A stretch of DNA of 64,000 nt from Schmidtea nova (GCA_044892505.1 CM097884.1:60140001-60204000); one strand, 5' to 3'; positions 27,867 through 64,000 are shown, counted from the stretch's first letter. Numbers and translations are program-made. Notes: generated by a model not told the origin, from the sequence alone.

Positions 27867-27890
27867 AAATTCACTATCTCAAATAAATTA

Positions 27891-27942
27891 CTAAAATTAT
27901 TTTTTGAAAAAAGTATAATAATAAAAATTTTAGAAAACTTAC
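27891..27942 (-). other. 5'-UTR spliceosomal intron (52 nt) of PCIF1-like copy A; 51-nt equivalent at 43473-43523
   Basis: GTAAGT...TTTTAG (copy A) and GTAAGT...TTTCAG (copy B); in-frame stops between acceptor and ATG show it is untranslated. Confidence 0.65.
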
Positions 27943-39937: not shown

Positions 39938-42841
39938 CACTTGATAAAGGCTGTGCCGAAATATTGTGTTATTGTTTATAAAAAAAAAATTTTTGATCTA
40001 TAGTCATTATGAGAATTATTGATAATAATAATAAAAAAAGATAATTATGATTATATATATATATATATGTAATGAGTGCTTACTTGTTATTACTTGTTAT
40101 CCCCCCTTTTTATAATTAACTGATGGATAGCAATTATGCCTTTAAATTATAATAAAAATTTGAAAAATTAATTTCAAATGATAAATAAATCAATTCCTAT
40201 AGTAATAATCAGAATTACTATAGGAATTAGACAATACGAATTAAAAAGAAAATTGATCACAAAATACAACTATCATAAAAATTTTTAAATTGCAAATTTT
40301 CAAAAACTATCAAGTCATCAAAGCAGAAGAATAAATTAAAGGAAGGATAAAAGAAAATTAATCTAAAGAAAAAAGTCTAAAAGAAACTTCAATATCTTAA
40401 GAGCTCCGGAAGGTCCAAGGTCGAAAAACAGAAATTAGCAATAAATCAAATAATCAAAAATTAGCAAATTATCAAAAATTAACAAGTTATCTAAACAGAA
40501 GAATTAAATTAAAGGAAGGTTAAAAGAAAATTAATTTAAAGAATAAAAGTCTATAAGAAAGTTAATATCATGAGATCTCCGGAAGGTCCAAGGTCGATCC
40601 ATCTATAAATTGAGATAATAATAAAGTAATATTTTCGTGGATTTTTTCGGTTTATTTTTTAATAAAAATTGTTAAATTAATCGTGTTATTAAATTGTTAT
40701 TCTGTCATTGTAAATTTTACCTTACACAGCAAACACCCCGAGTGTCTGCAAACGAATACCGTAAGACTCTCTCGGGCGCTTACATTTCTCTTTCTCACAC
40801 AATACAAACAGCAATAAANNNNNNNNNNNNNNNNNNNNNNNNNNNNNNNNNNNNNNNNNNNNNNNNNNNNNNNNNNNNNNNNNNNNNNNNNNNNNNNNNN
40901 NNNNNNNNNNNNNNNNNNNNNNNNNNNNNNNNNNNNNNNNNNNNNNNNNNNNNNNNNNNNTTCAACAAACAAATTAACAGCACAAAAGCACTAGCTCACA
41001 TTTAACAGTTACTATAAATCATGATTATTTATATTCTAAAAATATATTTCAAAAAGATGACTTTCAAATTTAGACTTTTTTCGATTTGTAAGGATGTACA
41101 GGTTCAATCAATGATATAGATCGATATACAACATTAAAATGCTTGTTCTATCTCTGCCAAATTCGTCCCCCGTACGCTGGTGAACATAAAGTAACTAAAC
41201 AATTATTTTTGAAATTTAATATGAAATTTTATACGTAAAAACCTATTAAAATGATAAATTTAAAGCAAAATTGCAGATCAAACATTCTACATAGATTAGA
41301 CTAGAATTTTATTGGTAAGAAAGACATACAACTGAAAATGATAAAGCTAAAATAATTGCAGATTAAACATCCTATATAATAGTTTTAGTTCATAACCACA
41401 AAGGAACACCAAGAAGGATATTGTGCCAAGCAGAGATAATATTAACAGTGGATTAGATTAGAATTTTATAAGCATGAAAGACATTATTATTATTAATTAA
41501 TAATTAATTCAAAAACACGAAAATTTAAGAATATTAAAGATATTATTATTATTTTTATGTAGTACACTTATAGTGTAATAGAAAAACTCCCAAATAGGAT
41601 CACACACAATTTCATCATTTGACCCTGCTCTTTCGACTTGCTCGTCAGTAGCGGATCGACGAGAACGCAATCAGGTTTTTACGCATAAATTTGATTCCGA
41701 AATTCCAAGGGTGGGTAGGCAGAAAATTGAATGGGTAAAGACAATAAATAGTAATATGTAGTCGTCTAATATTACTGACTGTGTTGGGTAGACTCTTCTT
41801 GCATGTTAGCTTAAAGAGTAAGTCGGTAGGATGGGATATTGCTCACCACAGAAGAGATATTCTAGATAGTCAACCAGGTAAGTATTAAAACCATTTAAAA
41901 AATCACCAAATATCAGGAAATATTTAATAAAGGTACGAGTTGATTGCCTTCGCAATGATTCCCGTAAATGAAGCTAATTGATGGGAAACCTGCGATGCCA
42001 ACGTGCGGGATTTGGGATCGGAACATGCCACAAATAACCCGAGCAGTGCATTAGCAACACGTAGAAAGAAACATTTATTCTCAGCAAATCGCTTACAATA
42101 TTGCATGCAAATCTTACCAATAAAATATTTCCACTTTTTATGGAAATTTTAGGCTAGTTATACAATTAAACCAGTTTTTCACAGGTTTTATTAAAGTTTT
42201 ACTTTGGAATCGTATTTAATTTGTAAATTCTTGCATTTCTTGCAAGTAGGTTGGTGATAATTCTATCTGCGTTTCCACATTTCCCATCATTCCCTATCGA
42301 TTTGTAGGGATGCACAAGTTCAATCGGTGATACAGATCGATACGCAACATTAAAATGATTGTTCTAATTTGTTCACCGTTTAAATGTTCGCAATGGTCAA
42401 ATTATTAGGAAACAAAGATATTTATCGTTTCGTGTCCAAATTTATTTTATAAATTGTAAAAATTATAAATAAAACGTTTCTAATAACATTTTAAAAGGAA
42501 AGTCAGCTGGGCGATGAATTAGGATTTGAAACATCAATAATCAATTAATTTAATGCTGTTCAAGGTAGTTGGACGCGTTCCGTCAATACAAATCCACCGT
42601 GTTGCGTAATTATACGCCGAATGATGCAATAGTCGACATACAAGTCTTTCCTCTTCCGCAGTAATTGACCCTTAGCTTGGCTTGATCATATAAGCAACGG
42701 AACAATGGGAATCAGTGGGAGAGTGATTTAATTTATACTTTATTTCATTGGCAACGTCTTATATATTAGCTATAGTTCGCTGTCAGTGTAGATACTTTTT
42801 CATTTTTTTAAACATTTTTATAAAAAACAATTAATTCTTAC

Positions 42842-43448
42842 TCAAAAACCGAGAATTAATCGGTGAAGCAAATCCCTCATATCGCACATTATAGTGCCTG
42901 TAATACGCTAGATGTAACTCCATCGGATCGCCCCATTGATAACTGCCGTTTCCGAGAGATTCATAGCGCAACAACATTCTCGTTACATCATCCAACGGAT
43001 AATGCTTTAATAAATAAGATAGATTGTCAAATTTCTTAGATGAAAATTCTCCATAACGAATGATATTATTGTTTATTCTTGGCTGTAAATCGGAAAAGTT
43101 TATTGCGGAATATCTTTGATGAGACTCATTAATAAATTCAAGAAGTTTCTTTACGGCTTCTATTGATTTTAAATCTTTGTTTTTCCCAAAAAAATATTTC
43201 TCCTTGATTGCATTCAACAATATATCGGCTATTTCATGCCCGAAGTTGATTTTCGATAGCAGAGGAAATGTGGCATATTTTGGAAGGGATTTATCTTCAT
43301 TAATTACCAACAGCCAGAGCTGAATGACATTTGTTCCTTCCTGTTTCTGTCTGGAATTTTCCAACATACAAATTCTATGGAAATATGAGTAAAGTTCTTG
43401 AGTAATAAATAGCCATTGTTTATATTCGATTTGAATTGAAGTATCCAT
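42842..43448 (-). CDS. PCIF1-like: 5' coding exon, copy B, of the PCIF1/CAPAM-like methyltransferase
   Basis: Same length, same GTAAG donor (42841-42840) and phase as copy A; 22 amino-acid differences by manual alignment; no stops or indels. Confidence 0.78.
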
Positions 43449-43919
43449 AAATTCACTATCTCAAATAAATTACTGAAATTATTTTTTGAAAAAAGTATAA
43501 TAATATAACTTTAGAAAACTTACAGTTTCACGAAGATTTTTAGAATTTAAAGTAAATTCTAGCAGTATCTTTAATTATGAAATGAAAGTTATATTTATGT
43601 ATTGCGAGCTCAGTTATTTAAAAAATTATTAGCTCATTTAAATATTGTAACCGAAAGATGATTTATTTAAATAATGAATAATTTAAATATTTTAAGATAA
43701 AAACTTTAAAAATAATGGAATCATTGATATTACAATGTTGAATTTTACTATTATTTGCATAGAAAAAAATATTTATAAATCTAAAGATATTTTAATATTA
43801 ACAATAATTTTAATTATAAGTAAGTTGACTATCAATTAATTTGTTTATTGTTAGACTAAAAGTAGATTTTATTTGAATAACGCGTATTACAGCACGTAGA
43901 GAGTGCTCACGAAGTAAAC

Positions 43920-46900
43920 TGTGATAATTAATTTATTTTAGATAATCAATTTAAGAAAAGAAAAAAGATTTGTTTATATCGAGTGATTTTCAAGGAGAAA
44001 CAGAATTTGAAAAAGAATCTTGTAGTAAAAAATAAACGTTGAATCGAGTTTTATTTCAAATATTTTGTCACAAGCTATCACGGCTATAATGGAGATGCAA
44101 AAATTTATCAAGCTCTAGGATGGAGTAGGTGAGTTTTCGACTTTGCCTAAGAAGTTAAAGTTAGCGGGCAAGCATAAAAAAATCGAAGATTTGGCCTTCG
44201 TTCTCCATTACTGCTTGATGGACCAGATTTTCTTGTTTATGATCACCTGACAGAGAAGGACAAAGAAAACATCGACGCAATTGAAAAATCCCTATCAGAT
44301 GCCTTTTCGATGGATGGATTCTAGGCATATGACACGTTTCGCATTCGTTTGTTGAATGGTGAGCCAGTTGAAGTTTTTCTTGCTGATCTGCAGCGATTAG
44401 CTACGCAGGCTGGAATAAATGATGGTGGGCTTCTCAAGAGAGCATTTGTAGTCGGACTTCCATCAATGGTTTCCCACCAACTCAGAGCTTCAGTAAGGAT
44501 CTTCGAAATGAACCTCTCAGAAGTTGTTAGACAAGCTCGAGCAATAATATCAGAACAAAATGGCTCCACTGGTCTAATTTCAGTGAAAGGAAGTGGTTCT
44601 GCGCCGGGTAAAGAAGTCAAACTTTGCTACGGATGTGGAAAATCGGGACATTTCACAAATAACTTCCCCTCTCAAGAGTGTTGGACCTGTGGAATCAAAG
44701 GGCATTCGTCGAGACAATGCTCTTCAAACGCACAGAGAAACCCCAGAAGAGAAACTGGAGCGCCAGCGGTTTCTCAATGATGTTAGGGATGGCGCGAGTA
44801 CTTGTCAGACTCAGAGTGAATGGAAAATCGTGCAAGCTAGAGTTGTTGTTGCAGTAGATGGTAGAAGAGTCCATTCTAATGGAGAGAATCAGTGTCATTT
44901 ATCTGTTCGAGGATCAAGTTTTTTGTTAAATTGCTTAATAATGACGAATCTTGTAACCGGAGTGGATTTTATTTTAGGTCTCGATGCGATTGAACGCCTT
45001 GGGGGAGTCTTAATTGACAATTATGGAGTACAGTTTGGTGAATGCACTTGAGTATCCATGCTGGCTTTATTTCAAGAACAAGTGAAAATCTACGATGAGG
45101 ATTTCGCTGCAAGTTTTGACGGAGAAAAGCTGACAATATCTTGGAAATGGAAAGACAAACCTCCAATATTGAGGAACAACGTTGCCGAATACGCAATTAA
45201 GCCTGAAGTATGACAAAAATATGAAGCTGAAGTAGAGCGATGGATAATGGAAGACTGGCTAACCTCTACTGAAGAAACCGGTCGAGGAATTCTTCCTCTT
45301 CTAGCTGCAATACAAGAAAACAAAGGAAAATTTCGACCTGTTCTTGATATTTGGGAACTCAATGAATTTGTGAAGAGTCACACTGGTGATAGTGATGTTT
45401 GTGGTGAGAGCCTAAAACAATGGAGACAGATGGGAGAACAGCTATAGATGCTTGATCTAGAAAATGCTTATCTAGAGTTGCATGTAAGCAAAGATCTTTG
45501 GGAATTTCAAAGGATTCGCTACAAAAAGAAGACGAATTATCTTACAAGACTAGGATTTGGTCTTAGTTGTGCTTCAAAGATAATGTCCTTAGTATTGAGA
45601 AAGGTGCTGAGTCTTGATTTGCGAATCTTGAATGCGACAGATCACTACATCGATGACATAGCTTTGAACACGAGTTTGGTGAGTATCGATAAAGTGGTGA
45701 AACATTTGGCTCAATTTTGATTAGTGACGAAGCCAGCGGAACTGTTAGTGGATACAAATTTTCTCGGTTTAAAAATTGAACGCAGTCGTCACGGTAATCT
45801 GTTATGGTCAAGAGGAAATATAGTTGACCCAATTGACGGTAAAGTTACTCGGCGTAACTTTTTTCTATTTGTGGATAGCTTATTGGGCATTATCCGGTCG
45901 TGGGGTGGCTCAGAGTGGCTTGCAGTTTTATCAAGAGAATTGCGGATGGTACAAATTGGGATAATCTCGTTGGAGCAGAGTGCGAATCGAGATTGACTGA
46001 AGTGATGAGTCTCATTGAACTGTACGATCCAGTCAAAGGAAGCCGGAATGTAAACACCAGGGATCACTGTACTTTATGGTATGTTGCTAGCAGTTTTGCT
46101 CTGGTGTCGTATTAGTGATAAATCGCCACGTCGTGGAGGATGCAACTGGCTCAGGAAAAGTGATGATTATTCATATATAAACGTCGCTGAGCTCGATGCA
46201 GTTCTTAAAGGCGTAAACTTAGCAATCAAATGGGGCATTAAAAAATCGAGCTGATGGTGGATTCGGTGACGGTAGAAGCTGGTTGAGAACAGTTTTAAGA
46301 TTCGTGTCCATGTAATTTCAGAGACTCTGGTTAGACGTCGCTTGGGAATAATAAAAGAGATTATCGAGAATGACAGTATTCTTATTCAGGTGCAATTGGT
46401 GAAATCAGCGGAAAACCAAGCAGATATACTGACACGCTTCCAAAGGGGTGGTTGAAGTCTAGAGCGTCCTTTGACTGCGTGGGCTTATCCTCAGAAGAAG
46501 TAAGGAACCGTCATGACAAACACCATTTTGGTCTGGAAAAATATATTTATTTCATTCAGTTAGAAACCCACACACCCTACGAGACGTCATAAAAATGTGG
46601 TAAGAAATTGTATTGAATGCAAATCTATCGATCTGTCGCCAATTAAGTGGGGAAATGGATCATTAGAAGTCAATAAAAATTGGAAAAACTAGCTGTAGAT
46701 GTAACGCACTACGAGGGATCCATTTTCTTGACTATCGTTGATTGTGAGCCTAGTATATTTGCCATTTGGAGAAGGATACCAAATGAAGATGCTCAAAATA
46801 TTGTGAAAAATCTCGAAGAAGTGTTTCGAGAGAGAGGTCCACCTCGTTAGCTACTCATGGAGAATGGGCCTAGTTTTCATTCTAAATCTTTACAAGATTT

Positions 46901-47618
46901 ATGTTGTAAATGCGATGTAAAGCCGACATACAGATGTGCCTACCGTCCATCTGGGAATGGGATCGTGGAGAGAAACCACCGGACCCACGCAGCCAGGACT
47001 CGTTTAGACCCACCGGATATTGTTTATTGGTATAACATGGCACCCAAAGACGCGAAGAATCAAAGTAAAACTCCATCAGAGGGGCTATTTAAGTACCGAT
47101 GGAAATTTCACAAAGGTGTCGAGGAGGAGCGCGTAGTATCTAGTAAATTTAAAACTGGTCTTGAATCTTGTTATAAAGCCAATTCCAACCAAATGCACTG
47201 ATCAGTGGTCCAGTGGAATCATCACTGGCATTAATTCAACTACCAACGTAGAGGTTGATGGAGTACCGCGTCATGTTGCAGACATCCCAGTGTTGCCAAA
47301 TCAACCTATCGAATCCAGCGATGTCGAATGCGAATTTGAAGACAAGCAGGTTGACATCAGAAATCCAGAAGAGAGTGAGGAAGACACGCGCTTGGCTCGC
47401 AATCGAAGGAAGCTTTCCTATCTTGATCAGTACGAGTTGGATTCGTCGTACTGATCACGGGGGAATGTGATAATTAATTTATTTTAGATAATCAAATTAA
47501 GAAAAGAAAAAAGATTTGTTTATATCGAGTAATTTTCAAGGAGAAACAGAATTTGAAAAAGAATCTTGTAGTAAAAAATAAACGTTGAATCGAGTTTTAT
47601 TTCAAATATTTTATCACA
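43920..47618 (+). mobile_element. Gypsy LTR retrotransposon, full length, internally decayed
   Basis: 153-bp TG...CA LTRs (43920-44072, 47466-47618; 3 mismatches), TSD TAAAC (43915-43919, 47619-47623), GGGGGAA purine tract. Gag knuckles CYGCGKSGH/CWTCGIKGH, RT LDLENAY...HYIDD, integrase ENGPSF...GNGIVERNHRT; many stops and frameshifts. Confidence 0.93.
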
Positions 47619-54053: not shown

Positions 54054-54790
54054 GATTATAAGTTCAATTTAACTTCGAAACATAAAATTACACCTCGCTT
54101 ATATTTTTTGGTTTGAAATCAATTAAATTCATTAAAAAAATATAAATAAAAAATAATTGTATTCAAAAATAAAATATCATTCTAAAAATTATTTTAACAA
54201 TATAAATCATGGATGCAAACTCCGGGCCGCTATGTAATTTTTAAAAATTCCTGTTTTAAGGTTGGGTGGTGTCCAATATCACATGCACGCCTATGACTGG
54301 AACTCTTATACACATAAATCCATCACAGGCAGACATTTTAAAACATGTCTCTAATTTCATTGTCAAGACTTCAACGGAATTTTTGCATTATTTATTTTGA
54401 TATAAAGATAATGATGCAGAAAAACATTTTGTGCCAATTAAATTGATTTCACCAATTGATTGCTTTCGTTTCATATTCGTCTCCAAAGTAATTTAGATCT
54501 TATACGGCGCGCGACCCAAGCTTTTGTGCACCCATGATTTATAACAATAATAAATTCATTTAAAATATAATAAAATAGTCTCACTCAAAATAATAAACAA
54601 AAGCTGTATTTATCAAAATTGGAAAAATCTTGGCAAAGCATACAAATAATGATTTCAGAGTTCTCAAATATTTTGATTTATTATCAAGTAAATAGTTTAT
54701 ATTATTTGGTTACCAAAATCCATGTTTCCTGTTAAAATATCAAAAATAAAATGTTGATAGCATTCAATGTGAAAAAGATTGAAAAATCTC
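54054..54790 (+). repeat. ~730-bp dispersed repeat, copy 2
   Basis: See 9650-10370. Confidence 0.85.
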
Positions 54791-55646
54791 AACAAAAAAT
54801 TAAAAATCGATTTAAGAAAATTATTTTCCAAATGCAGTTGTCAATGATAAAAATCTTATTTTTTATATCTATCTTTAAAATTAATTATTGTTTGGGTTTG
54901 TCTGAACAGGCAGGAAATCAAATAAAAAGCACAAAAACTATGTGCAAATCAAAAATACTTAAAATTTATAAATGATAATTAAAGCACAAAAGTTAATTAA
55001 AAATTTGAAAAATTATAAAATATAGATTTAGTTGGAGAAATTGGTATGAGTGTATGCTAAATAGTTAAACGAATCCAAAAATGGTGTCCAAAGGAAATAA
55101 TTGAACAAAATTAATTAAGAATTATTTGGCCTATTGTGAAACCCGAGTCAATAGAAGTAGGGGGATGTGAGCCCCCCAGCACAGGATGAGTTATCGCGCA
55201 CCGCCGATTAAAACAAAATTTTTTTTACCAAAATACTATTGATTTTTGCAAAATACTATTGATTTTTATTTTTTCACACACTGCACTTTTAGTTTTTAAT
55301 ATGTGCTCTAAACTATTTTCGTGAATATTATATACCATTAGACTCGTAAATAAATTCTTTACAAGAATGTATATATATTTTTGTGTAAATATTGATTTTT
55401 CAGTTTTGCACATTTTGCACTTTGACTTTTTTACAAGTTTTATAAATATTTTTCAACATATTTTTACATCATTCAACTCGTAATCGTCTATTCTACAAAA
55501 TCAAGTCATTACTTTTATGAAACTATTTATCTTCAAAATTTTCAATTTTCATTTACTAATTTTAATTATTTTCAAAATATTTTTACATCAATGTATTCAA
55601 CAAGTATGTATAATGTATAAACAAAGTTTTAAATTATTATATTGAA

Positions 55647-56270
55647 ATGGAGTTGCAAAATGATGCTGTTTACCAAATTGTGGGACCTAGTGGTAGTGGT
55701 AAAACGCTTTTTGTATGTAAACTGTTGCAATCAAATTTATTTGTTGAAAAATTCAATCAAATATATTGGCATCAAGGTTCCGAATCTGAAAATGGTTTGA
55801 CACAAACAGAATTTTGTAAAGTCAAAATGAAAATAATCAAGGGTTTTGATAAAGATTGGACAAAGAGATTAAAAAAGAGAGACGTTATCATAATTGATGA
55901 TTTGTTTCAAGAAGCCAACAAAGAAAAAGAATTTAATAATTTATTTACAAAGATTTCTAGACATGTTGGAGTTACAGTTATATTCATAACACAGAATCTT
56001 TTCCAACAAGGTGGAAATCATAGAACACGTAATTTGAATGTACATTATCTGGTTATTTTTAAAAATCCAAGAGATGCAACAGTTATAGATTTTCTTGCAA
56101 GACAAGCATATCCAAACAATAGAAAATTTCTACTTGAAGCATTTCAAGATGCTACCAAAGTTCCTCATGGATATTTATTTCTAAACTTTACTCAGAAATG
56201 TCCAGATGATTTACGAGTCAGAACTGATATATTTAACAAGAATGGTGCGACTATATATAAACAAAGCTGA
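55647..56270 (+). CDS. A32-like/FtsK-HerA DNA packaging ATPase
   Basis: Walker A GPSGSGKT, Walker B VIIIDDL, SRH arginine finger, IFITQN. Confidence 0.92.
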   Translation: MELQNDAVYQIVGPSGSGKTLFVCKLLQSNLFVEKFNQIYWHQGSESENGLTQTEFCKVKMKIIKGFDKDWTKRLKKRDVIIIDDLFQEANKEKEFNNLFTKISRHVGVTVIFITQNLFQQGGNHRTRNLNVHYLVIFKNPRDATVIDFLARQAYPNNRKFLLEAFQDATKVPHGYLFLNFTQKCPDDLRVRTDIFNKNGATIYKQS

Positions 56271-56287
56271 ATAAAAAAAAATGAATT

Positions 56288-56818
56288 ATGAAAATGTCGT
56301 TTCAAAAATTCGTTCTCAAACCTACAAAGAAAACTAATTTAAAGAATTTAATTAGAAAACAAAAGAAGAAGAAGAAGAAGAAGATTATTTCAAACAGAGT
56401 TCCTCCAAAAACAAGTTACACACCTCCAAAAGAGTACGGAATAGCTAGGAAACAACGTATAGAGTTCAAAAAATCTAAACAAATGAAGGTTCCTCGAAGC
56501 TTACCGTATTTTACATCATTGTTAAAGGCACCGAAACAATCGAGAATGACAATTTTACAGTCATTTCCTACATTTGTGATTGATGACTTACTTGACATTA
56601 TAATGAAAGTTGTATATGGAAAGGTGAACATTAGCAATGCCAAGAAACAAGTTTTGAAAAAACACAAGAAATCTCTTTTATCTCTTGTAAATAGCAAGAA
56701 TAGGAAACAAATGAGAAAGATAATGTATAAACAACATGGAGGATTTATTGCTGCATTGATACCGCTTGCATTATCATTATTGGGAGGAGCAGGTTTATTA
56801 GGTAAACCGAAAACATAA
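56288..56818 (+). CDS. Lys-rich basic protein with adenoviral pX-like hydrophobic C-terminus (putative core/maturation substrate)
   Basis: Poly-Lys tracts; ends QHGG-FIAALIPLALSLLGGAG, resembling adenovirus pX MRGG-ILPLLIPLIAAAIG. Confidence 0.65.
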   Translation: MKMSFQKFVLKPTKKTNLKNLIRKQKKKKKKKIISNRVPPKTSYTPPKEYGIARKQRIEFKKSKQMKVPRSLPYFTSLLKAPKQSRMTILQSFPTFVIDDLLDIIMKVVYGKVNISNAKKQVLKKHKKSLLSLVNSKNRKQMRKIMYKQHGGFIAALIPLALSLLGGAGLLGKPKT

Positions 56819-56879
56819 ACAATGGGTGCTAGTCCTTCATTACCTAATTTCAAGGTTGATTTTAAATCAAATTGTTGCA

Positions 56880-57902
56880 ATGGAGAAAATTTGGACAAAT
56901 CCGAAAGATCCAGCCTCTTTCGGCGGAGTAAAAAAATTAAAGAAGGCAGTTCTGAACTCAAAGAAAGAGACTCAAACATGGTTGTCAAACCAATTGGCAT
57001 ACAGTCTAAATAAACCAATGTTGAAAAGGTTTCCTACAAGAGCCTATAAAACATTCGGAATTGATGATTTGTGGCAATTAGATTTGATGGAAATGATTCC
57101 ATACTCAAAGATTAACAAAGGTTTCAAGTATATTCTAACATGCATTGATGTTTTTAGTCGGTTTGCAAGAGCCATTCCAGTAAAATCAAAATCTGCAAAT
57201 GAAATATCATTAGCAATCAACATGTTATTTGATGATGGTCATCCTGATAATTTACAAACAGATTTGGGTAAAGAGTTCTATAACAGTAAAGTGAAACAAG
57301 TTCTAAAGGAAAATCATGTAAATCATTATACTGTTCATTCCCAGTACAAGGCAGCACATGTTGAACGTTTTAATCGTACATTACGTGATAAATTGAAAAA
57401 GTATTTTGTACATCAAGGTAATAAAACATGGATACATGTTTTACCAAAACTTGTACATTCATATAATCATTCACCACATCGTGGATTGAATGGATTGAGA
57501 CCAATTGATGTTTCATCAGATAATCAAGTAGAGTTGTGGTTGTCTCGTAAAAACCCCAAAGTAAAGAAACCAAAGTATAAAATCGGAGAATATGTGCGAA
57601 TATCAAAAATTAGTGCTTCACCATTCATTAAAAACTTTGACTCAAATTGGAGTGATGAAGTATTTCAAATTTCAAAAATTAATACAAAACAGAGTCCTGT
57701 CATGTATAACATTAAAGATTATGACAACAATGAAATTGATGGGAAATTCTATGAACAAGAATTACAGGTTATTCCACCACCTACAGTATTTAGAATAGAA
57801 AAGATTCTAAAGACTAAAGGAAAAGGGAAACATAAACAATATCACGTCAAATGGCATGGTTATCAAAACCCTACTTGGATATCAGAATCTCAGTTACAAT
57901 GA
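56880..57902 (+). CDS. Retroviral-like (rve) DDE integrase with C-terminal chromo-like domain
   Basis: WQLDL, QTDLGKEF, VERFNRTLR catalytic motifs; FRIEKILK...YHVKWHGY..PTWI tail. Likely start ATG 56880 (MEKIW). Confidence 0.93.
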   Translation: MEKIWTNPKDPASFGGVKKLKKAVLNSKKETQTWLSNQLAYSLNKPMLKRFPTRAYKTFGIDDLWQLDLMEMIPYSKINKGFKYILTCIDVFSRFARAIPVKSKSANEISLAINMLFDDGHPDNLQTDLGKEFYNSKVKQVLKENHVNHYTVHSQYKAAHVERFNRTLRDKLKKYFVHQGNKTWIHVLPKLVHSYNHSPHRGLNGLRPIDVSSDNQVELWLSRKNPKVKKPKYKIGEYVRISKISASPFIKNFDSNWSDEVFQISKINTKQSPVMYNIKDYDNNEIDGKFYEQELQVIPPPTVFRIEKILKTKGKGKHKQYHVKWHGYQNPTWISESQLQ

Positions 57903-58924
57903 ATAAAAGTAATTTCTATATGATTTTACCGAGTAATAGTTGCCCATTAATTCATCCAAATAATGAAGCCAGTAACTTTATTGTTGAACTTCAAAATCCA
58001 ATCTATTTGAAAGGTAATTGGGAGGTAGCGTTGTTGGACTTTACATTTGTGTATAATCTATTTCCGTTTTACAGCAAATGTAAGATAGAATATATTCAAA
58101 AACAGATGATATCAGAAGATATTAAAGTAAAAATAAATAATGATCAAATTGAAATGAGAAATCATGAACATACAAATGCAATAATATATATAGAAGGTAA
58201 ATATTTGTACATAAAATGTTTGAAGAAGCCATTTCAAATTTTATTTGAAACGTTAACAGATGCAAAATATCTTGGATTCACACTGTTACGTAACCTTTTT
58301 GATGAAACTGTAAAAATACAACTTGATACTATTTCGCTGCAAACTAAAACTTTGGTGGAATTTAAATTTCAATTACTGTACAATGAAATATCTGAACATG
58401 TGTTTACCTTGAAAGATGAATTATATATTACGGACCTTAATCAACTACAAGTTTATTTAACACAAAATTGTGAAAATATTTTCACTATAGTTGAATTAGT
58501 AAAAGACAAGTTTTTTAAATTCCAAATTAATTCAAAGATTAGTCAAGTTAAATTTGACTCAAATTTGGTAAAAACATTAGGATTATCAAAACAAACTTGG
58601 TTACAAAATGGTCAAGTTAATGAGGGAACAACAAATCCTAAAATAATTAAACTTCATCAACAAATGTTCATCTATAGCAACATTGTTGAACCGATTATTG
58701 TTGGTGATTCTCGTGTTCCCCTGTTAAAGACAGTGTGGATTGAAAAATACGAACAAGATGAAGTAGTGCAAATTGTATTAGAAAATCCAATGTATCTATC
58801 TATGTCAACATCATGTATAAACAATATAGAAATTAACATACGTGATGATTCTGGAAAATCTATAAATTTTTCAAAAGATTCAAAAACTCATTTGACTTTG
58901 CATTTCAAAAAGGTAGATGTCTAA
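57899..58924 (+). CDS. Minor capsid (penton-like) protein
   Basis: FYMILPSNS...ASNFIVEL..PI.L.G.WEVAL and FIYSNIVE..IVGD..VPLL...IEINIRD..G...LTLHF Polinton mCP motifs; ATGA overlap with the integrase stop. Confidence 0.82.
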   Translation: MNKSNFYMILPSNSCPLIHPNNEASNFIVELQNPIYLKGNWEVALLDFTFVYNLFPFYSKCKIEYIQKQMISEDIKVKINNDQIEMRNHEHTNAIIYIEGKYLYIKCLKKPFQILFETLTDAKYLGFTLLRNLFDETVKIQLDTISLQTKTLVEFKFQLLYNEISEHVFTLKDELYITDLNQLQVYLTQNCENIFTIVELVKDKFFKFQINSKISQVKFDSNLVKTLGLSKQTWLQNGQVNEGTTNPKIIKLHQQMFIYSNIVEPIIVGDSRVPLLKTVWIEKYEQDEVVQIVLENPMYLSMSTSCINNIEINIRDDSGKSINFSKDSKTHLTLHFKKVDV

Positions 58925-59306
58925 TCCTGATATTGTTTCGCTTTATAATGGTAGTCAATCAGGTGGTGAATTACCATATTTTGTTGGTAAACAATATGGT
59001 TCTGGATGGTTGCGCACAATAGGTAGATATGCACTTCCAATTCTTAAAAAGATTGGTTCTTTTGGAATGAAAACAGCAAGTGATGTGTTAGTGAAAAATC
59101 AGAAAATTTTACCAACTTTAAAAAGACATGCAATGGAGGAAATTGGTAAAATAATGCCTAGTGCAAAAAAGATTTTCAAACCAAGTGAACCGGAAAAACC
59201 TACACCAAAACCAGTTGTTCCTCGTAGTAAACGAAAAAAGTTTCTTATAAACAAAAGATGGAAAGGTCGTGGAACAATATTTGAAAATGATTTGCGGCAA
59301 AACTGA
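58917..59306 (+). CDS. Small basic Polinton protein with QxGG/QxGxG motifs (core-like)
   Basis: SQSGGELPYFVGKQYGSGWLRTIGRYALPILKKIG; overlaps both neighbours. Confidence 0.7.
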   Translation: MSNPDIVSLYNGSQSGGELPYFVGKQYGSGWLRTIGRYALPILKKIGSFGMKTASDVLVKNQKILPTLKRHAMEEIGKIMPSAKKIFKPSEPEKPTPKPVVPRSKRKKFLINKRWKGRGTIFENDLRQN

Positions 59307-60117
59307 ATTGTCACTTTTTGATCGTCCATCTCCTCAAGTAGTAATTGAACATGGTACATTTGAAGATGTATTTCCTATGAACTCAATTACTGATTCGCGA
59401 AATGATGTAGAATTCTATATTAATGGATCACAAACAGAGTATTTGGACTTGAACGACACACTTTTATCCATTCAATTGAAAGTTGTGGATAAAGACAAGA
59501 AGGATTTGGCTGATGGTGTAGATGTGGTACCGAGTAACTTTATGTTTCATACACTATTTAAAGATGTCATACTTGGATTTAATAACATCAAGATTGAAGG
59601 AGGAAACAATACATATGCGCAGAAAGCTTTGATAGAAACTATTTTAAACTATAATGGAGATACAAAGAGTGTTTCGCTTGCAGCAATGGGTTATGGAACT
59701 AAAGAATTTCGAAAACAATGGATTGCAAAATCAAGATTGTTTTCAATGTGTTCATCGTTACAACTAGATTTCATGGATCAACCCAAATACTTGCTTCCTG
59801 GTGTCAATGTTCACATTCGTCTAAAGAGATCAGATTCAAAATTTTGTTTGGATACAACAGTTGCTGGAGCAGCACCAAAATATCAGTTGATTGATGCAAA
59901 ATTAATGGTTCGTAGAGTGCGAGTTGAATCATCAGTGTTGGTAGGTCATCAGATTGGTCTTAATTCACAACATGCAATTTATCCCATCAAGTCAAAAGAA
60001 ATTGTTGCATTTGCATTAGGCAAAGATTCGTCATCGTTTTATAAAGAACAAATATTTGGTGATAAACGTTTACCAAACTTTATTCTTGTAACATGCAACT
60101 GCAACAATTTCTTTTGA
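59287..60117 (+). CDS. Major capsid protein (double jelly-roll type), C-terminally truncated at the fold-back
   Basis: CGKTELSLF..P..Q..IE, YLDLNDTLL, LF..V.L..N, YLLPGV...IRL.R motifs of Polinton MCP; ends VTCNCNNFF* just past the junction. Likely start ATG 59287. Confidence 0.85.
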   Translation: MICGKTELSLFDRPSPQVVIEHGTFEDVFPMNSITDSRNDVEFYINGSQTEYLDLNDTLLSIQLKVVDKDKKDLADGVDVVPSNFMFHTLFKDVILGFNNIKIEGGNNTYAQKALIETILNYNGDTKSVSLAAMGYGTKEFRKQWIAKSRLFSMCSSLQLDFMDQPKYLLPGVNVHIRLKRSDSKFCLDTTVAGAAPKYQLIDAKLMVRRVRVESSVLVGHQIGLNSQHAIYPIKSKEIVAFALGKDSSSFYKEQIFGDKRLPNFILVTCNCNNFF

Positions 60118-60822
60118 CTTGATGGGATAAATTGCATGTTGTGAATTAAGACCAATCTGATGACCTACCAACACTGATGATTCAACTCGCACTCTACGAA
60201 CCATTAATTTTGCATCAATCAACTGATATTTTGGTGCTGCTCCAGCAACTGTTGTATCCAAACAAAATTTTGAATCTGATCTCTTTAGACGAATGTGAAC
60301 ATTGACACCAGGAAGCAAGTATTTGGGTTGATCCATGAAATCTAGTTGTAACGATGAACACATTGAAAACAATCTTGATTTTGCAATCCATTGTTTTCGA
60401 AATTCTTTAGTTCCATAACCCATTGCTGCAAGCGAAACACTCTTTGTATCTCCATTATAGTTTAAAATAGTTTCTATCAAAGCTTTCTGCGCATATGTAT
60501 TGTTTCCTCCTTCAATCTTGATGTTATTAAATCCAAGTATGACATCTTTAAATAGTGTATGAAACATAAAGTTACTCGGTACCACATCTACACCATCAGC
60601 CAAATCCTTCTTGTCTTTATCCACAACTTTCAATTGAATGGATAAAAGTGTGTCGTTCAAGTCCAAATACTCTGTTTGTGATCCATTAATATAGAATTCT
60701 ACATCATTTCGCGAATCAGTAATTGAGTTCATAGGAAATACATCTTCAAATGTACCATGTTCAATTACTACTTGAGGAGATGGACGATCAAAAAGTGACA
60801 ATTCAGTTTTGCCGCAAATCAT
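60070..60822 (-). CDS. Mirror major capsid protein, shorter truncation (ends EIVAVACYKNKVW*)
   Basis: Identical to the + copy up to KEIVA, then reads the spacer antisense. Confidence 0.8.
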   Translation of the reverse strand: MICGKTELSLFDRPSPQVVIEHGTFEDVFPMNSITDSRNDVEFYINGSQTEYLDLNDTLLSIQLKVVDKDKKDLADGVDVVPSNFMFHTLFKDVILGFNNIKIEGGNNTYAQKALIETILNYNGDTKSVSLAAMGYGTKEFRKQWIAKSRLFSMCSSLQLDFMDQPKYLLPGVNVHIRLKRSDSKFCLDTTVAGAAPKYQLIDAKLMVRRVRVESSVLVGHQIGLNSQHAIYPIKSKEIVAVACYKNKVW

Positions 60823-61192
60823 TTTCAAATATTGTTCCACGACCTTTCCATCTTTTGTTTATAAGAAACTTTTTTCGTTTACTACGAGGAACAACTGGTT
60901 TTGGTGTAGGTTTTTCCGGTTCACTTGGTTTGAAAATCTTTTTTGCACTAGGCATTATTTTGCCAATTTCCTCCATTGCATGTCTTTTTAAAGTTGGTAA
61001 AATTTTCTGATTTTTCACTAACACATCACTTGCTGTTTTCATTCCAAAAGAACCAATCTTTTTAAGAATTGGAAGTGCATATCTACCTATTGTGCGCAAC
61101 CATCCAGAACCATATTGTTTACCAACAAAATATGGTAATTCACCACCTGATTGACTACCATTATAAAGCGAAACAATATCAGGATTAGACAT
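60803..61192 (-). CDS. Mirror copy of small basic protein
   Basis: Identical protein to 58917-59306. Confidence 0.7.
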   Translation of the reverse strand: MSNPDIVSLYNGSQSGGELPYFVGKQYGSGWLRTIGRYALPILKKIGSFGMKTASDVLVKNQKILPTLKRHAMEEIGKIMPSAKKIFKPSEPEKPTPKPVVPRSKRKKFLINKRWKGRGTIFENDLRQN

Positions 61193-62210
61193 CTACCTTT
61201 TTGAAATGCAAAGTCAAATGAGTTTTTGAATCTTTTGAAAAATTTATAGATTTTCCAGAATCATCACGTATGTTAATTTCTATATTGTTTATACATGATG
61301 TTGACATAGATAGATACATTGGATTTTCTAATACAATTTGCACTACTTCATCTTGTTCGTATTTTTCAATCCACACTGTCTTTAACAGGGGAACACGAGA
61401 ATCACCAACAATAATCGGTTCAACAATGTTGCTATAGATGAACATTTGTTGATGAAGTTTAATTATTTTAGGATTTGTTGTTCCCTCATTAACTTGACCA
61501 TTTTGTAACCAAGTTTGTTTTGATAATCCTAATGTTTTTACCAAATTTGAGTCAAATTTAACTTGACTAATCTTTGAATTAATTTGGAATTTAAAAAACT
61601 TGTCTTTTACTAATTCAACTATAGTGAAAATATTTTCACAATTTTGTGTTAAATAAACTTGTAGTTGATTAAGGTCCGTAATATATAATTCATCTTTCAA
61701 GGTAAACACATGTTCAGATATTTCATTGTACAGTAATTGAAATTTAAATTCCACCAAAGTTTTAGTTTGCAGCGAAATAGTATCAAGTTGTATTTTTACA
61801 GTTTCATCAAAAAGGTTACGTAACAGTGTGAATCCAAGATATTTTGCATCTGTTAACGTTTCAAATAAAATTTGAAATGGCTTCTTCAAACATTTTATGT
61901 ACAAATATTTACCTTCTATATATATTATTGCATTTGTATGTTCATGATTTCTCATTTCAATTTGATCATTATTTATTTTTACTTTAATATCTTCTGATAT
62001 CATCTGTTTTTGAATATATTCTATCTTACATTTGCTGTAAAACGGAAATAGATTATACACAAATGTAAAGTCCAACAACGCTACCTCCCAATTACCTTTC
62101 AAATAGATTGGATTTTGAAGTTCAACAATAAAGTTACTGGCTTCATTATTTGGATGAATTAATGGGCAACTATTACTCGGTAAAATCATATAGAAATTAC
62201 TTTTATTCAT
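61185..62210 (-). CDS. Mirror copy of minor capsid protein
   Basis: Identical protein to 57899-58924. Confidence 0.82.
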   Translation of the reverse strand: MNKSNFYMILPSNSCPLIHPNNEASNFIVELQNPIYLKGNWEVALLDFTFVYNLFPFYSKCKIEYIQKQMISEDIKVKINNDQIEMRNHEHTNAIIYIEGKYLYIKCLKKPFQILFETLTDAKYLGFTLLRNLFDETVKIQLDTISLQTKTLVEFKFQLLYNEISEHVFTLKDELYITDLNQLQVYLTQNCENIFTIVELVKDKFFKFQINSKISQVKFDSNLVKTLGLSKQTWLQNGQVNEGTTNPKIIKLHQQMFIYSNIVEPIIVGDSRVPLLKTVWIEKYEQDEVVQIVLENPMYLSMSTSCINNIEINIRDDSGKSINFSKDSKTHLTLHFKKVDV

Positions 62211-63229
62211 TGTAACTGAGATTCTGATATCCAAGTAGGGTTTTGATAACCATGCCATTTGACGTGATATTGTTTATGTTTCCCTTTTCCTTTAGTCTTT
62301 AGAATCTTTTCTATTCTAAATACTGTAGGTGGTGGAATAACCTGTAATTCTTGTTCATAGAATTTCCCATCAATTTCATTGTTGTCATAATCTTTAATGT
62401 TATACATGACAGGACTCTGTTTTGTATTAATTTTTGAAATTTGAAATACTTCATCACTCCAATTTGAGTCAAAGTTTTTAATGAATGGTGAAGCACTAAT
62501 TTTTGATATTCGCACATATTCTCCGATTTTATACTTTGGTTTCTTTACTTTGGGGTTTTTACGAGACAACCACAACTCTACTTGATTATCTGATGAAACA
62601 TCAATTGGTCTCAATCCATTCAATCCACGATGTGGTGAATGATTATATGAATGTACAAGTTTTGGTAAAACATGTATCCATGTTTTATTACCTTGATGTA
62701 CAAAATACTTTTTCAATTTATCACGTAATGTACGATTAAAACGTTCAACATGTGCTGCCTTGTACTGGGAATGAACAGTATAATGATTTACATGATTTTC
62801 CTTTAGAACTTGTTTCACTTTACTGTTATAGAACTCTTTACCCAAATCTGTTTGTAAATTATCAGGATGACCATCATCAAATAACATGTTGATTGCTAAT
62901 GATATTTCATTTGCAGATTTTGATTTTACTGGAATGGCTCTTGCAAACCGACTAAAAACATCAATGCATGTTAGAATATACTTGAAACCTTTGTTAATCT
63001 TTGAGTATGGAATCATTTCCATCAAATCTAATTGCCACAAATCATCAATTCCGAATGTTTTATAGGCTCTTGTAGGAAACCTTTTCAACATTGGTTTATT
63101 TAGACTGTATGCCAATTGGTTTGACAACCATGTTTGAGTCTCTTTCTTTGAGTTCAGAACTGCCTTCTTTAATTTTTTTACTCCGACGAAAGAGGCTGGA
63201 TCTTTCGGATTTGTCCAAATTTTCTCCAT
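62207..63229 (-). CDS. Mirror copy of integrase
   Basis: Identical except PASFVG vs PASFGG. Confidence 0.92.
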   Translation of the reverse strand: MEKIWTNPKDPASFVGVKKLKKAVLNSKKETQTWLSNQLAYSLNKPMLKRFPTRAYKTFGIDDLWQLDLMEMIPYSKINKGFKYILTCIDVFSRFARAIPVKSKSANEISLAINMLFDDGHPDNLQTDLGKEFYNSKVKQVLKENHVNHYTVHSQYKAAHVERFNRTLRDKLKKYFVHQGNKTWIHVLPKLVHSYNHSPHRGLNGLRPIDVSSDNQVELWLSRKNPKVKKPKYKIGEYVRISKISASPFIKNFDSNWSDEVFQISKINTKQSPVMYNIKDYDNNEIDGKFYEQELQVIPPPTVFRIEKILKTKGKGKHKQYHVKWHGYQNPTWISESQLQ

Positions 63230-63290
63230 TGCAACAATTTGATTTAAAATCAACCTTGAAATTAGGTAATGAAGGACTAGCACCCATTGT

Positions 63291-63821
63291 TTATGTTTTC
63301 GGTTTACCTAATAAACCTGCTCCTCCCAATAATGATAATGCAAGCGGTATCAATGCAGCAATAAATCCTCCATGTTGTTTATACATTATCTTTCTCATTT
63401 GTTTCCTATTCTTGCTATTTACAAGAGATAAAAGAGATTTCTTGTGTTTTTTCAAAACTTGTTTCTTGGCATTGCTAATGTTCACCTTTCCATATACAAC
63501 TTTCATTATAATGTCAAGTAAGTCATCAATCACAAATGTAGGAAATGACTGTAAAATTGTCATTCTCGATTGTTTCGGTGCCTTTAACAATGATGTAAAA
63601 TACGGTAAGCTTCGAGGAACCTTCATTTGTTTAGATTTTTTGAACTCTATACGTTGTTTCCTAGCTATTCCGTACTCTTTTGGAGGTGTGTAACTTGTTT
63701 TTGGAGGAACTCTGTTTGAAATAATCTTCTTCTTCTTCTTCTTCTTTTGTTTTCTAATTAAATTCTTTAAATTAGTTTTCTTTGTAGGTTTGAGAACGAA
63801 TTTTTGAAACGACATTTTCAT
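63291..63821 (-). CDS. Mirror copy of Lys-rich pX-like protein
   Basis: Identical protein to 56288-56818. Confidence 0.65.
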   Translation of the reverse strand: MKMSFQKFVLKPTKKTNLKNLIRKQKKKKKKKIISNRVPPKTSYTPPKEYGIARKQRIEFKKSKQMKVPRSLPYFTSLLKAPKQSRMTILQSFPTFVIDDLLDIIMKVVYGKVNISNAKKQVLKKHKKSLLSLVNSKNRKQMRKIMYKQHGGFIAALIPLALSLLGGAGLLGKPKT

Positions 63822-63838
63822 AATTCATTTTTTTTTAT

Positions 63839-64000
63839 TCAGCTTTGTTTATATATAGTCGCACCATTCTTGTTAAATATATCAGTTCTGACTCGTAAAT
63901 CATCTGGACATTTCTGAGTAAAGTTTAGAAATAAATATCCATGAGGAACTTTGGTAGCATCTTGAAATGCTTCAAGTAGAAATTTTCTATTGTTTGGATA
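63839..64000 (-). CDS. Mirror copy of packaging ATPase, 3' part (continues beyond window)
   Basis: Reverse complement of 56109-56270. Confidence 0.85.
   Translation of the reverse strand, partial: YPNNRKFLLEAFQDATKVPHGYLFLNFTQKCPDDLRVRTDIFNKNGATIYKQS

What the first reader, a model, noticed from the sequence alone, without database searches (positions are those of the whole stretch)
55146..64000. Palindromic (snap-back) Polinton: a mirror-image half genome
Seen: a 6-gene Polinton block is duplicated head-to-head about 60054/60055, with at least 3.9 kb per arm, intact ORFs and only two arm differences noticed. The fold lies inside the major capsid gene, so pPolB and the maturation protease, expected in a complete element, are absent. 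Established: Polintons replicate by protein-primed strand displacement from TIRs and integrate with 6-bp TSDs; snap-back defective genomes are known in other linear DNA viruses. Inference: if the mirror ends at the TIR, this is a ~9.8-kb defective-interfering-like genome with two identical ends and its own integrase, packaged and replicated in trans by a helper Polinton and then integrated.
Basis: partly seen in the sequence, partly recalled or inferred. Interest (0 to 1): 0.85.

Follow-up and report, generated by a model that had tools for sequence, protein, structure and literature searches.

The report
Mirror-duplicated left half of a Polinton
The left part of a virus-like mobile element (an adintovirus-type Polinton) in what looks like an arachnid genome is present twice, head to head, folded inside its capsid gene. 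The window cannot show whether this is a natural "snap-back" defective genome, a chromosomal rearrangement or an assembly error, because the far end lies outside it.

Summary
Window 56109-60016 and 60093-64000 are reverse complements: 3,908 nt, no indels, 3 mismatches. The mirror runs to the window end.

The fold is not a perfect hairpin. A 76-nt non-palindromic spacer continues the left arm's capsid gene, so one copy is 76-90 nt longer. That is the signature of a single strand switch.

Each arm carries:
- an A32-type packaging ATPase;
- ORF176;
- an rve integrase (D-D-E kept, weak chromodomain);
- a penton protein (fold match);
- ORF129;
- the first two-thirds of a double-jelly-roll capsid protein (fold match; relatives are 405-412 aa).

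There is no polymerase or protease. In one relative an adenain protease follows the capsid gene.

The host looks arachnid, and the element is an adintovirus-type Polinton.

The origin is not settled. The right terminus (expected 64953-64963) is outside the window and the source contig could not be found. My estimates are snap-back defective genome 0.4, assembly or library artefact 0.25, chromosomal fold-back 0.2, and end-joined broken copies 0.1.

Butterfly Polintons with ~2-kb gene-bearing TIRs, and polB-less polymorphic derivatives, are already reported. If real, this is an extreme variant, not a new kind.

The parts
55146..55646 (.). Left terminal non-coding region of the element. The outer boundary is approximate; the candidates are 55146 or 55156.
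   Evidence: A short G+C-rich stretch starts near 55140 in an A+T-rich flank. Short direct repeats are present: an 11-nt word three times and a 20-nt tandem pair. There is no second end, other copy or empty-site paralogue in the window to fix the boundary.
56109..60016 (.). Left arm of the inverted duplication. This is only the part whose mirror is visible; the arm probably starts at the element's left end.
60093..64000 (.). Right arm of the inverted duplication, cut by the window end.
60017..60092 (+). A 76-nt asymmetric spacer. It is capsid-gene sequence present only in the left (+) copy.
   Evidence: It is not self-complementary. It aligns in frame with full-length relatives.
55647..56270 (+). 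Packaging ATPase (A32/FtsK-type), 207 aa, left copy.
   Evidence: Pfam Pox_A32, E 4.7e-08, above the cut-off. PHROGs ATPase. P-loop and acidic Walker B-like stretch seen in the translation.
56288..56818 (+). ORF176, left copy: lysine-rich with a hydrophobic C-end and no cysteine. Function unknown; possibly a virion core or membrane-active protein.
   Evidence: no family hit
56880..57902 (+). rve integrase with a weak C-terminal chromodomain, left copy. The ORF is open from 56826; the first ATG is at 56880.
   Evidence: Pfam rve, E 2.6e-10. Chromo, E 3e-04, below the cut-off. Aligns to the foamy-virus integrase core with D, D and E kept.
57899..58924 (+). Penton (vertex, single jelly-roll) protein, left copy.
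   Evidence: Model pLDDT 84. Best fold matches are the mavirus penton, adenovirus penton base and Sputnik penton. Relatives align from 57899.
58917..59306 (+). ORF129, left copy; function unknown.
59287..60092 (+). Major capsid gene remnant, left copy. It is broken once by a 3' truncation and keeps about two-thirds of the protein.
   Evidence: Aligns to residues 1-272 of 405-412-aa relatives. A relative's model (pLDDT 87) matches double-jelly-roll capsid proteins.
60093..60822 (-). Major capsid gene remnant, right copy. It is broken once by a 3' truncation and is shorter than the left copy.
60803..61192 (-). ORF129, right copy. It carries one synonymous difference from the left copy.
61185..62210 (-). 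Penton gene, right copy, identical in protein to the left copy.
62207..63229 (-). Integrase gene, right copy. It carries one amino-acid difference from the left copy.
63291..63821 (-). ORF176, right copy, identical in protein to the left copy.
63839..64000 (-). 3' end of the right copy of the ATPase gene. It is cut by the window end, which is not a break in the gene.
   Evidence: Mirror of 56109-56270.

Best explanation
What it is (shown): the left ~4.9 kb of an adintovirus-type Polinton (Maverick) sits in an animal genome, probably an arachnid one. It runs from the terminal non-coding region through the ATPase, ORF176, integrase, penton and ORF129 to the first two-thirds of the capsid gene. 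It is joined head to head to a mirror copy of itself. The mirror copy starts 76-90 nt short of where the first copy stops.

How it arose (inferred): one strand switch. A strand being copied from the element's left end left its template inside the capsid gene. It resumed on the complementary, displaced strand a few dozen bases back and copied its way out to the left end again. The result is a self-complementary strand, which folds into a hairpin with a 76-nt loop. The next round of copying turns that hairpin into a linear palindrome with two identical left ends.

The element's own protein-primed, strand-displacing polymerase, acting on an extrachromosomal copy, is the most likely author. The integrase would then have inserted the product, since both of its ends are valid termini.

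Consequences (inferred):
- The copy cannot replicate or build capsids on its own. It has no polymerase, no protease and no complete capsid protein, so any spread would depend on full-length relatives.
- The two arms are transcribed towards each other, and the capsid gene's 3' end signals are gone. Read-through would therefore give a long hairpin RNA, a possible trigger of RNA silencing against the family.

The confidence of 0.4 is for the replicative snap-back plus integration origin. That the sequence shows a single fold-back duplication of a Polinton's left part is near certain, and that it is real in the genome I put at about 0.75.
For: - The arms match at 3,905 of 3,908 positions with no indels. 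The asymmetric 76-nt spacer is capsid coding sequence of one copy only. Two truncation points 76-90 nt apart argue for one event, not two independent ones.
- 6 nt of complementarity sit next to the junction (60011-60016 and 60093-60098), just beyond a mismatch.
- phi29 polymerase is a strand-displacing enzyme of the same protein-primed family B class (my own knowledge). It makes exactly this kind of product: 85% of its chimeras are inverted joins of nearby segments, and most are primed on 2-21 nt of complementarity on the displaced strand (PMC1855051).
- The gene set is viral and compact, with 99% coding and overlapping ORFs. It comprises a double-jelly-roll capsid protein, penton, packaging ATPase and integrase.
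- The visible ORFs other than the capsid gene are unbroken in every copy seen, so the copy is young.
- The arm differences are substitutions only, which is unlike raw long-read error.
- Butterfly Polintons carry ~2-kb terminal inverted repeats that contain the hexon and adenain genes. polB-less derivatives are insertion polymorphisms there too (bioRxiv 10.1101/2025.02.07.637071). Terminal inverted duplications therefore do arise and persist in this group.
- In adenovirus, subgenomic packaged DNA holds only left-end sequence, and undersized genomes are packaged as direct and inverted dimers (PMC4189039).
Against: - The decisive feature, whether the mirror ends exactly at the terminus with a 6-bp target duplication, lies outside the window.
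- No full-length copy, polymerase gene or second copy is in the window.
- The same junction geometry is produced by host replication or repair and by amplification chimeras.
- Long palindromes with short spacers are unstable in many organisms (my own knowledge), which slightly favours an artefact or a very recent event.
- At ~9.8 kb the palindrome would be well under the usual 15-20 kb unit length of this group (my own knowledge). In adenovirus, genomes under 75% of unit length tend to rearrange (PMC4189039).
- No read-level evidence is available.
Confidence: 0.4

Rival explanations
1. Assembly or library artefact. The genome holds one ordinary copy, and a fold-back chimeric molecule made the assembler walk back along the reverse complement of the same sequence. 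Such a molecule could come from an amplification chimera, a hairpin ligation product, a missed-adapter long read or a gap-filling step.
For: - The junction type is exactly that of phi29 amplification chimeras (PMC1855051).
- The arms are nearly identical.
- The window comes from a gapped draft scaffold with five N runs.
- The palindrome runs to the window end, so nothing shows that unique sequence follows it.
- The few arm differences could be the two alleles of a heterozygous locus taken in turn.
Against: - The arms differ at 2-3 positions and have no indels. That is unlike a single noisy chimeric read or a simple double traversal.
- An assembler would have had to prefer a rare chimeric path over the well-covered true continuation of the capsid gene.
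- The palindrome lies inside 23 kb of gap-free sequence (40961-64000).
- Nothing says the DNA was amplified.
Confidence: 0.25
2. Chromosomal fold-back after integration. An ordinary integrated copy suffered a break or a stalled fork inside the capsid gene. Host replication or repair then copied back along the other strand. [quoted passage not shown] The result is an inverted duplication that has nothing to do with the element's own life cycle.
For: - The arms plus a short spacer, and a 6-nt interrupted inverted match at the junction, are the substrate and product described for host-driven inverted amplification (PMC4689423).
- The mismatch next to the 6-nt match would fit error-tolerant repair synthesis (inference).
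Against: - A random chromosomal fold-back has no reason to fall inside this element.
- It would normally delete or duplicate host sequence beyond the element, which cannot be seen here.
- Five genes remain open in both arms, which is neutral for this question.
Confidence: 0.2
3. End-joining of two broken copies. Two molecules of the element, either extrachromosomal genomes or sister chromatids, were each broken in the same stretch of the capsid gene. Host end-joining then ligated them head to head.
For: - It gives the same final structure.
- Little or no junction homology is needed, and a mismatch beside a 6-nt match is compatible with it.
- Inverted dimers of undersized linear genomes are known for adenovirus vectors (PMC4189039).
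Against: - It needs two breaks within 76-90 nt of each other in two molecules, where a strand switch needs one event.
- No filler or deleted bases are detectable at the join.
Confidence: 0.1
4. An element with extreme, gene-bearing terminal inverted repeats. On this reading it is a natural family whose normal form is almost entirely TIR, not a defective by-product.
For: Butterfly Polintons have ~2-kb TIRs that contain hexon and adenain.
Against: - Only 76 nt lie between the arms.
- The capsid gene is truncated in both arms, whereas all 100+ relatives are 405-412 aa.
- There is no polymerase.
This is therefore not a viable standard architecture.
Confidence: 0.05

Closest known systems
Adintoviruses and animal Polintons (Mavericks), including spider-associated ones (PMC8502044)
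   Same: - Double-jelly-roll capsid protein, penton and A32/FtsK-type packaging ATPase.
- rve integrase with a predicted chromodomain.
- Adenain protease next to the capsid gene in a relative.
- Animal host.
   Different: - This copy has no polymerase, no protease and only two-thirds of the capsid gene.
- The whole visible element is a mirror duplication.
Butterfly Polintons with ~2-kb gene-bearing TIRs, and polB-less polymorphic derivatives (bioRxiv 10.1101/2025.02.07.637071)
   Same: - Inverted duplication of a terminal block that includes structural genes, giving two copies per insertion.
- Derivatives without polB still occur as insertion polymorphisms.
   Different: - There, the TIRs flank a full unique middle and the duplicated genes are whole.
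- Here, the unique middle is 76 nt and the innermost gene is truncated.
Adenovirus subgenomic and incomplete-particle DNA, and inverted dimers of undersized helper-dependent genomes (PMC4189039, which cites Daniell 1976; the 1976 paper could not be opened)
   Same: - Linear protein-primed dsDNA genome.
- Defective molecules keep one end and can be inverted dimers with two identical ends.
- Dependence on a complete helper.
   Different: - Those are packaged extrachromosomal molecules seen in infected cells.
- Here, a chromosomal copy is seen and nothing shows packaging or replication.
Inverted chimeras made by phi29 polymerase in multiple displacement amplification (PMC1855051)
   Same: - Inverted join of nearby segments.
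- Short complementarity at the join.
- A strand-displacing polymerase of the protein-primed type (the class assignment is my own knowledge).
   Different: Those are an in-vitro artefact, not a biological genome. That same likeness is why an artefact cannot be excluded.
Mu killer of maize: a partial inverted duplication of MuDR that gives a ~4-kb hairpin RNA and silences the family (PMC3440606)
   Same: A partial, inverted duplication of a mobile element that includes one terminus twice. The arms are about the same length.
   Different: - Plant DNA transposon.
- Silencing is shown genetically there.
- Here, no expression or small-RNA data exist.
Host-driven inverted amplification at short interrupted inverted repeats (ODIRA) and fold-back inversions (PMC4689423)
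   Same: Palindromic junction with a short loop bounded by a short inverted match.
   Different: - Those products are usually triplications or reach far beyond any one element.
- The extent here is unknown.

Membership tests
Polinton / Maverick (adintovirus type) | Protein-primed family B DNA polymerase | tested here: not met
   No polymerase domain is found in any ORF of the arms, and there is none elsewhere near the element. It is absent from this copy. The family assignment rests on the other genes.
Polinton / Maverick (adintovirus type) | Retrovirus-like (rve, DDE) integrase | tested here: met
   Pfam rve, E 2.6e-10, above the cut-off. D, D and E are aligned with the foamy-virus integrase core. 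The chromodomain hit is below the cut-off (21.1 against 25.1 bits).
Polinton / Maverick (adintovirus type) | Double-jelly-roll major capsid protein | tested here: met
   The window fragment aligns to 405-412-aa relatives. A relative's model matches the capsid proteins of SGIV, PBCV-1, Sputnik and mavirus (E down to 9e-18). It also matches a bracovirus-borne protein at 25% identity, adomavirus LO7 and MELD-virus proteins. In this copy only about the first jelly roll is left.
Polinton / Maverick (adintovirus type) | Penton (single jelly-roll vertex protein) | tested here: met
   The model of the window's own ORF (pLDDT 84) matches the mavirus penton (E 1.4e-07), adenovirus penton base and Sputnik penton.
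Polinton / Maverick (adintovirus type) | FtsK/A32-type packaging ATPase | tested here: met
   Pfam Pox_A32, 33.2 bits against a 22.8 cut-off.
Polinton / Maverick (adintovirus type) | Adenain-like maturation protease | tested here: not met
   There is none in the arms, and ORF176 and ORF129 have no cysteine. In a relative's gene model the capsid C-end is followed by a Peptidase_C5 domain, so the gene is expected just beyond the fold.
Polinton / Maverick (adintovirus type) | Terminal inverted repeats | tested here: inconclusive
   The two ends would be inverted copies simply because of the palindrome. The right end is outside the window, and the left boundary is only approximate.
Polinton / Maverick (adintovirus type) | 6-bp target-site duplication | not testable with these tools
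   The right flank lies beyond base 64000. The source contig was not found, and there is no paralogous empty site.
Snap-back / defective-interfering genome of a linear dsDNA virus | Inverted duplication of one genome end, including the terminus itself | tested here: inconclusive
   The duplication is seen for 3.9 kb up to the window end. Whether it includes and stops at the terminus is not visible.
Snap-back / defective-interfering genome of a linear dsDNA virus | Loss of genes essential for autonomous replication | tested here: met
   The polymerase, the protease and the capsid C-terminal third are missing.
Snap-back / defective-interfering genome of a linear dsDNA virus | Exists as a replicating or packaged molecule that depends on, and interferes with, a helper | not testable with these tools
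   There are no read, particle or expression data, and no full-length copy in the window.
Chromosomal fold-back inversion / ODIRA-type inverted duplication | Inverted arms around a short spacer bounded by a short inverted match | tested here: met
   A 76-nt spacer, with a 6-nt inverted match at 60011-60016 and 60093-98.
Chromosomal fold-back inversion / ODIRA-type inverted duplication | Extent of the duplication is unrelated to element boundaries (reaches into host DNA) | not testable with these tools
   The mirror of the left host flank would lie beyond base 64963.
Assembly / amplification artefact | Arms identical because they derive from one locus | tested here: inconclusive
   There are 3 substitutions and no indels. 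Heterozygosity could mimic real arm divergence.
Assembly / amplification artefact | Junction supported by few or chimeric reads, with arm depth equal to flank depth | not testable with these tools
   No reads are available.

The most novel reading that the evidence does not exclude
The palindrome is an integrated snap-back by-product of the element's own protein-primed, strand-displacing replication. That would make it the first physical trace of a defective, two-left-ended genome in the Polinton/adintovirus group. It would have been inserted by integrase, would rely on full-length relatives for any spread, and would now be placed to yield a long hairpin RNA against the family's integrase, penton and capsid genes.
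Probability: 0.3. Interest if true: 0.75.

Novelty: new variant of a known kind. Interest (0 to 1): 0.5.

Why it matters
Polintons are believed to replicate as linear, protein-primed genomes outside the chromosome, but the evidence is almost all inferred from gene content.

A chromosomal copy whose architecture can only be made by a strand switch on a free linear genome, and whose mirror ends exactly at the terminus with its own target duplication, would be a fossil of that replication step. It would also show that defective genomes form and integrate in this group, as they do in adenoviruses. It would link the long gene-bearing TIRs recently seen in insect Polintons to one mechanism.

Independently of its origin, a 3.9-kb-plus inverted duplication of viral genes in an animal genome is a candidate source of hairpin RNA against active relatives.

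If it is an artefact, it is a useful warning for scans of draft assemblies.

Tried and rejected
Searches that found nothing useful:
- Exact look-up of the window's ATPase found nothing.
- Homology searches with the penton and the capsid fragment found no cluster closer than 67% and 74%. The source genome is therefore not in the searchable collections, and the sequence beyond 64000 could not be read.
- Rfam and tRNA scans of the window found nothing.
- Sequence-only searches of the PDB with capsid and penton profiles found nothing meaningful. Only fold comparison worked.
- PHROGs gave no hit for the capsid, penton, ORF176 or ORF129.
- There is no other copy, no capsid C-terminus and no polymerase elsewhere in the window.
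- A dispersed repeat left of the element (54054-54792) was tested as a paralogous empty site. It ends about 350 nt short of the element, so it gives no boundary.
- Daniell 1976 could not be opened.
- Literature searches found no report of a palindromic or snap-back Polinton.

Readings rejected:
- Nested insertion of one copy into another. A nested copy would begin with its terminus, not at the mirrored point of the same gene.
- Integrase autointegration. It inverts or deletes DNA but does not duplicate it.
- Two independent truncated insertions. Their truncation points would not fall 76-90 nt apart.

I used them in no call and in no conclusion.


Full report
**Observation.**
A scan for inverted repeats finds one outstanding pair: 56109-60016 against 60093-64000. 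Each arm is 3,908 nt, with 76 nt between them, and the right arm ends only because the window ends. Mirroring each base about 60054.5 gives three mismatching pairs in the arms and no indels. Inside 60017-60092, 28 of 38 mirror pairs mismatch, so the centre is a real, non-palindromic spacer.
- the fold is asymmetric;
- there are three arm differences, not two;
- of the sixth gene (the ATPase), only the last 162 nt are visible in the right arm.

**What the genes are.**
Six closely packed ORFs lie on the + strand of the left arm, and their mirror copies lie on the - strand of the right arm. Coding density from 55647 to 60092 is 99%, with three overlapping gene junctions.
1. 55647-56270 is a P-loop ATPase that matches Pfam Pox_A32 above the curated cut-off.
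2. 56288-56818 is ORF176, which is lysine-rich with a hydrophobic tail and has no family hit.
3. 56880-57902 is an rve integrase (E 2.6e-10) with a sub-threshold chromodomain. It aligns to the foamy-virus integrase core with the D-D-E residues kept.
4. 57899-58924 has a model with pLDDT 84. Its best structural matches are the mavirus penton, adenovirus penton base and Sputnik penton.
5. 58917-59306 is ORF129, with no hit.
6. 59287-60092 aligns from residue 1 to about residue 272 of relatives that are 405-412 aa long, with up to 74% identity.

A model of one full-length relative (pLDDT 87) matches the double-jelly-roll capsid proteins of an iridovirus, PBCV-1, Sputnik and mavirus. Among predicted viral structures it matches a bracovirus-borne protein at 25% identity, adomavirus LO7, a MELD-virus protein and virophage capsids. 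The window therefore keeps roughly the first jelly roll and loses nearly all of the second.

No ORF in the arms has a polymerase or protease domain. ORF176 and ORF129 have no cysteine, so neither is a cysteine protease. One relative's gene model runs from the capsid C-end into a Peptidase_C5 (adenain) domain. The protease therefore lies just downstream of the capsid gene in that relative, which is the region the fold removed.

**Break count.**
The four genes wholly visible in both arms have 0 stops and 0 frameshifts there, and so does the left-arm ATPase. The capsid gene is broken once in each arm, by a 3' truncation at the fold. The right-arm ATPase copy is cut by the window end, which is not a break.

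**Host and family.**
The rest of the window is A+T-rich, intron-type eukaryotic DNA full of transposon remnants: hAT, FLYWCH, reverse transcriptase and an LTR-like pair. The hAT ORF is 87% identical to a protein of the scorpion Centruroides sculpturatus, and the next-best named hits are from spiders. The host is therefore an animal, probably an arachnid.

Animal Polinton-like viruses with this gene set, including an integrase with a predicted chromodomain and examples from spiders, are described as adintoviruses (PMC8502044). I therefore treated the element as a virus-like element of an animal:
- the N runs were left alone;
- the DNA contigs of relatives were not fetched (see referred steps).

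**Anatomy of the junction.**
The spacer is the in-frame continuation of the left capsid gene, conserved against relatives to its end. The right copy diverges from relatives as soon as it enters the spacer. The + strand therefore reads: left copy up to about 60092, then the reverse complement of the same sequence starting 76 nt further back.

One of the three mismatches (pair 60010/60099) lies 7 nt from the inner arm end. By chance that has a probability of about 0.5%. There, the left arm keeps the aromatic residue that relatives have, and the right arm does not. There are two readings:
- The duplicated arms really end at 60009/60100.
- A later substitution fell there by chance.

I cannot decide between them (note). 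The other two differences are one synonymous change in ORF129 and one amino-acid change near the integrase N-end. Two differences in 3.9 kb mean the arms are young. With an arthropod-like mutation rate of a few times 1e-9 per site per generation (my own knowledge), that is on the order of 1e5 generations, or less if the differences are allelic or errors.

**Mechanism.**
Two truncation points 76-90 nt apart in mirror copies point to one event, a strand switch.

The closest documented chemistry is that of phi29 polymerase. 85% of its chimeras are inverted joins of nearby segments, and most are primed on 2-21 nt of complementarity on the displaced strand (PMC1855051). Polinton polymerases belong to the same protein-primed, strand-displacing class (established knowledge).

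The product of such a switch on a linear genome copied from its left end is a self-complementary strand. One more round of copying turns it into a palindrome with two left ends. Both ends would be valid for end-primed replication and for integrase.

Two pieces of literature support its plausibility. In adenovirus, subgenomic packaged DNA contains only left-end sequence, and undersized genomes are packaged as direct and inverted dimers (PMC4189039). Butterfly Polintons have ~2-kb TIRs that contain the hexon and adenain genes, and polB-less derivatives occur there as insertion polymorphisms (bioRxiv 10.1101/2025.02.07.637071).

**Rivals.**
- Assembly or library artefact (0.25). The junction is what amplification chimeras look like, the window is a gapped draft, and nothing unique is seen to the right. 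Against this, the arms differ by substitutions only, with no indels, and an assembler would have had to prefer a rare chimeric path over the true continuation of the gene.
- Chromosomal fold-back after integration (0.2). [quoted passage not shown] It would not respect the element's boundary.
- End-joining of two broken copies (0.1). It gives the same product but needs two nearby breaks.
- A family whose normal form is nearly all TIR (0.05). It is unlikely, because the innermost gene is truncated in both arms while all relatives are full length.

**What would follow from the structure.**
The copy is non-autonomous. Its arms are transcribed towards each other. AATAAA words overlap the stop codons of the ATPase and the integrase. 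None occurs on the + strand between 58132 and 61652, and the capsid gene's own 3' end is gone. Read-through into the antisense of the other arm is therefore plausible, and it would give a long hairpin RNA. The maize Mu killer locus is a partial inverted duplication of MuDR that yields a ~4-kb hairpin RNA and silences the family (PMC3440606). It shows what such a structure can do. This step is inference only.

**Limits.**
The left boundary (55146 or 55156) cannot be fixed. There is no second end, no other copy and no empty-site paralogue in the window. The right terminus and the target duplication are outside the window. The window's proteins are absent from the collections. No reads are available.

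In my working thoughts I recalled two short adenovirus motif patterns from memory.

**Verdict.**
The snap-back reading is plausible and ranked first, but it is unproven. If real, this is a new variant of known kinds (Polintons with gene-bearing TIRs, and defective inverted genomes of protein-primed viruses). Interest is 0.5.

Noticed in passing
window 25608-26289: A tandem array with a 16-nt period, about 40 units at 60-92% identity to a reference unit. It overlaps the long ORFs at 25710-26405, which are probably artefacts of the repeat.
   Followed up: partly
window 26855-28347 and 42437-43903: A 1.5-kb dispersed direct repeat, 93% identical. Each copy carries a 205-aa ORF (27249-27866 and 42831-43448) with a weak PCIF1_WW-like hit. 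It is probably a transposon family.
   Followed up: partly
window 43920-44072 and 47466-47618: 153-nt direct repeats, 98% identical, bracket a G+C-richer 3.5 kb. They look like the LTR pair of a small LTR element.
   Followed up: no
window 17286-17924, 24783-25493, 34395-34835: A hAT dimerisation-domain ORF (87% identical to a Centruroides sculpturatus protein), a FLYWCH zinc-finger ORF and a reverse-transcriptase fragment. The flank is transposon-rich animal DNA.
   Followed up: partly
window 55207-55646: The left non-coding region of the element holds an 11-nt word three times (55237, 55257, 55390), a 20-nt tandem pair (55222-55260) and a 27-nt repeat (55445 and 55564). These are candidate terminal, packaging or promoter signals.
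   Followed up: no
window 56270 and 57902: AATAAA overlaps the stop codons of the ATPase and integrase genes. None occurs on the + strand from 58132 to 61652, so late-gene transcripts would lack a nearby signal after the fold.
   Followed up: partly
proteins P0448, P0073, P0103, P0049, P0124: UniParc gene models fuse pieces of this capsid/penton family to adenain, a PRP39-type HAT repeat, a formin FH3 domain, a kinase or a transposase domain. They look like chimeric annotations of related elements in some animal genome.
   Followed up: partly
window 9650-10350 and 54054-54760: A dispersed repeat, 91% identical. One copy lies about 390 nt left of the element.
   Followed up: yes
window 11024-11485, 19917-20055, 21862-22011, 36647-36844, 40819-40960: Five N runs of unequal length. 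The element lies in 23 kb of gap-free sequence to their right.
   Followed up: no
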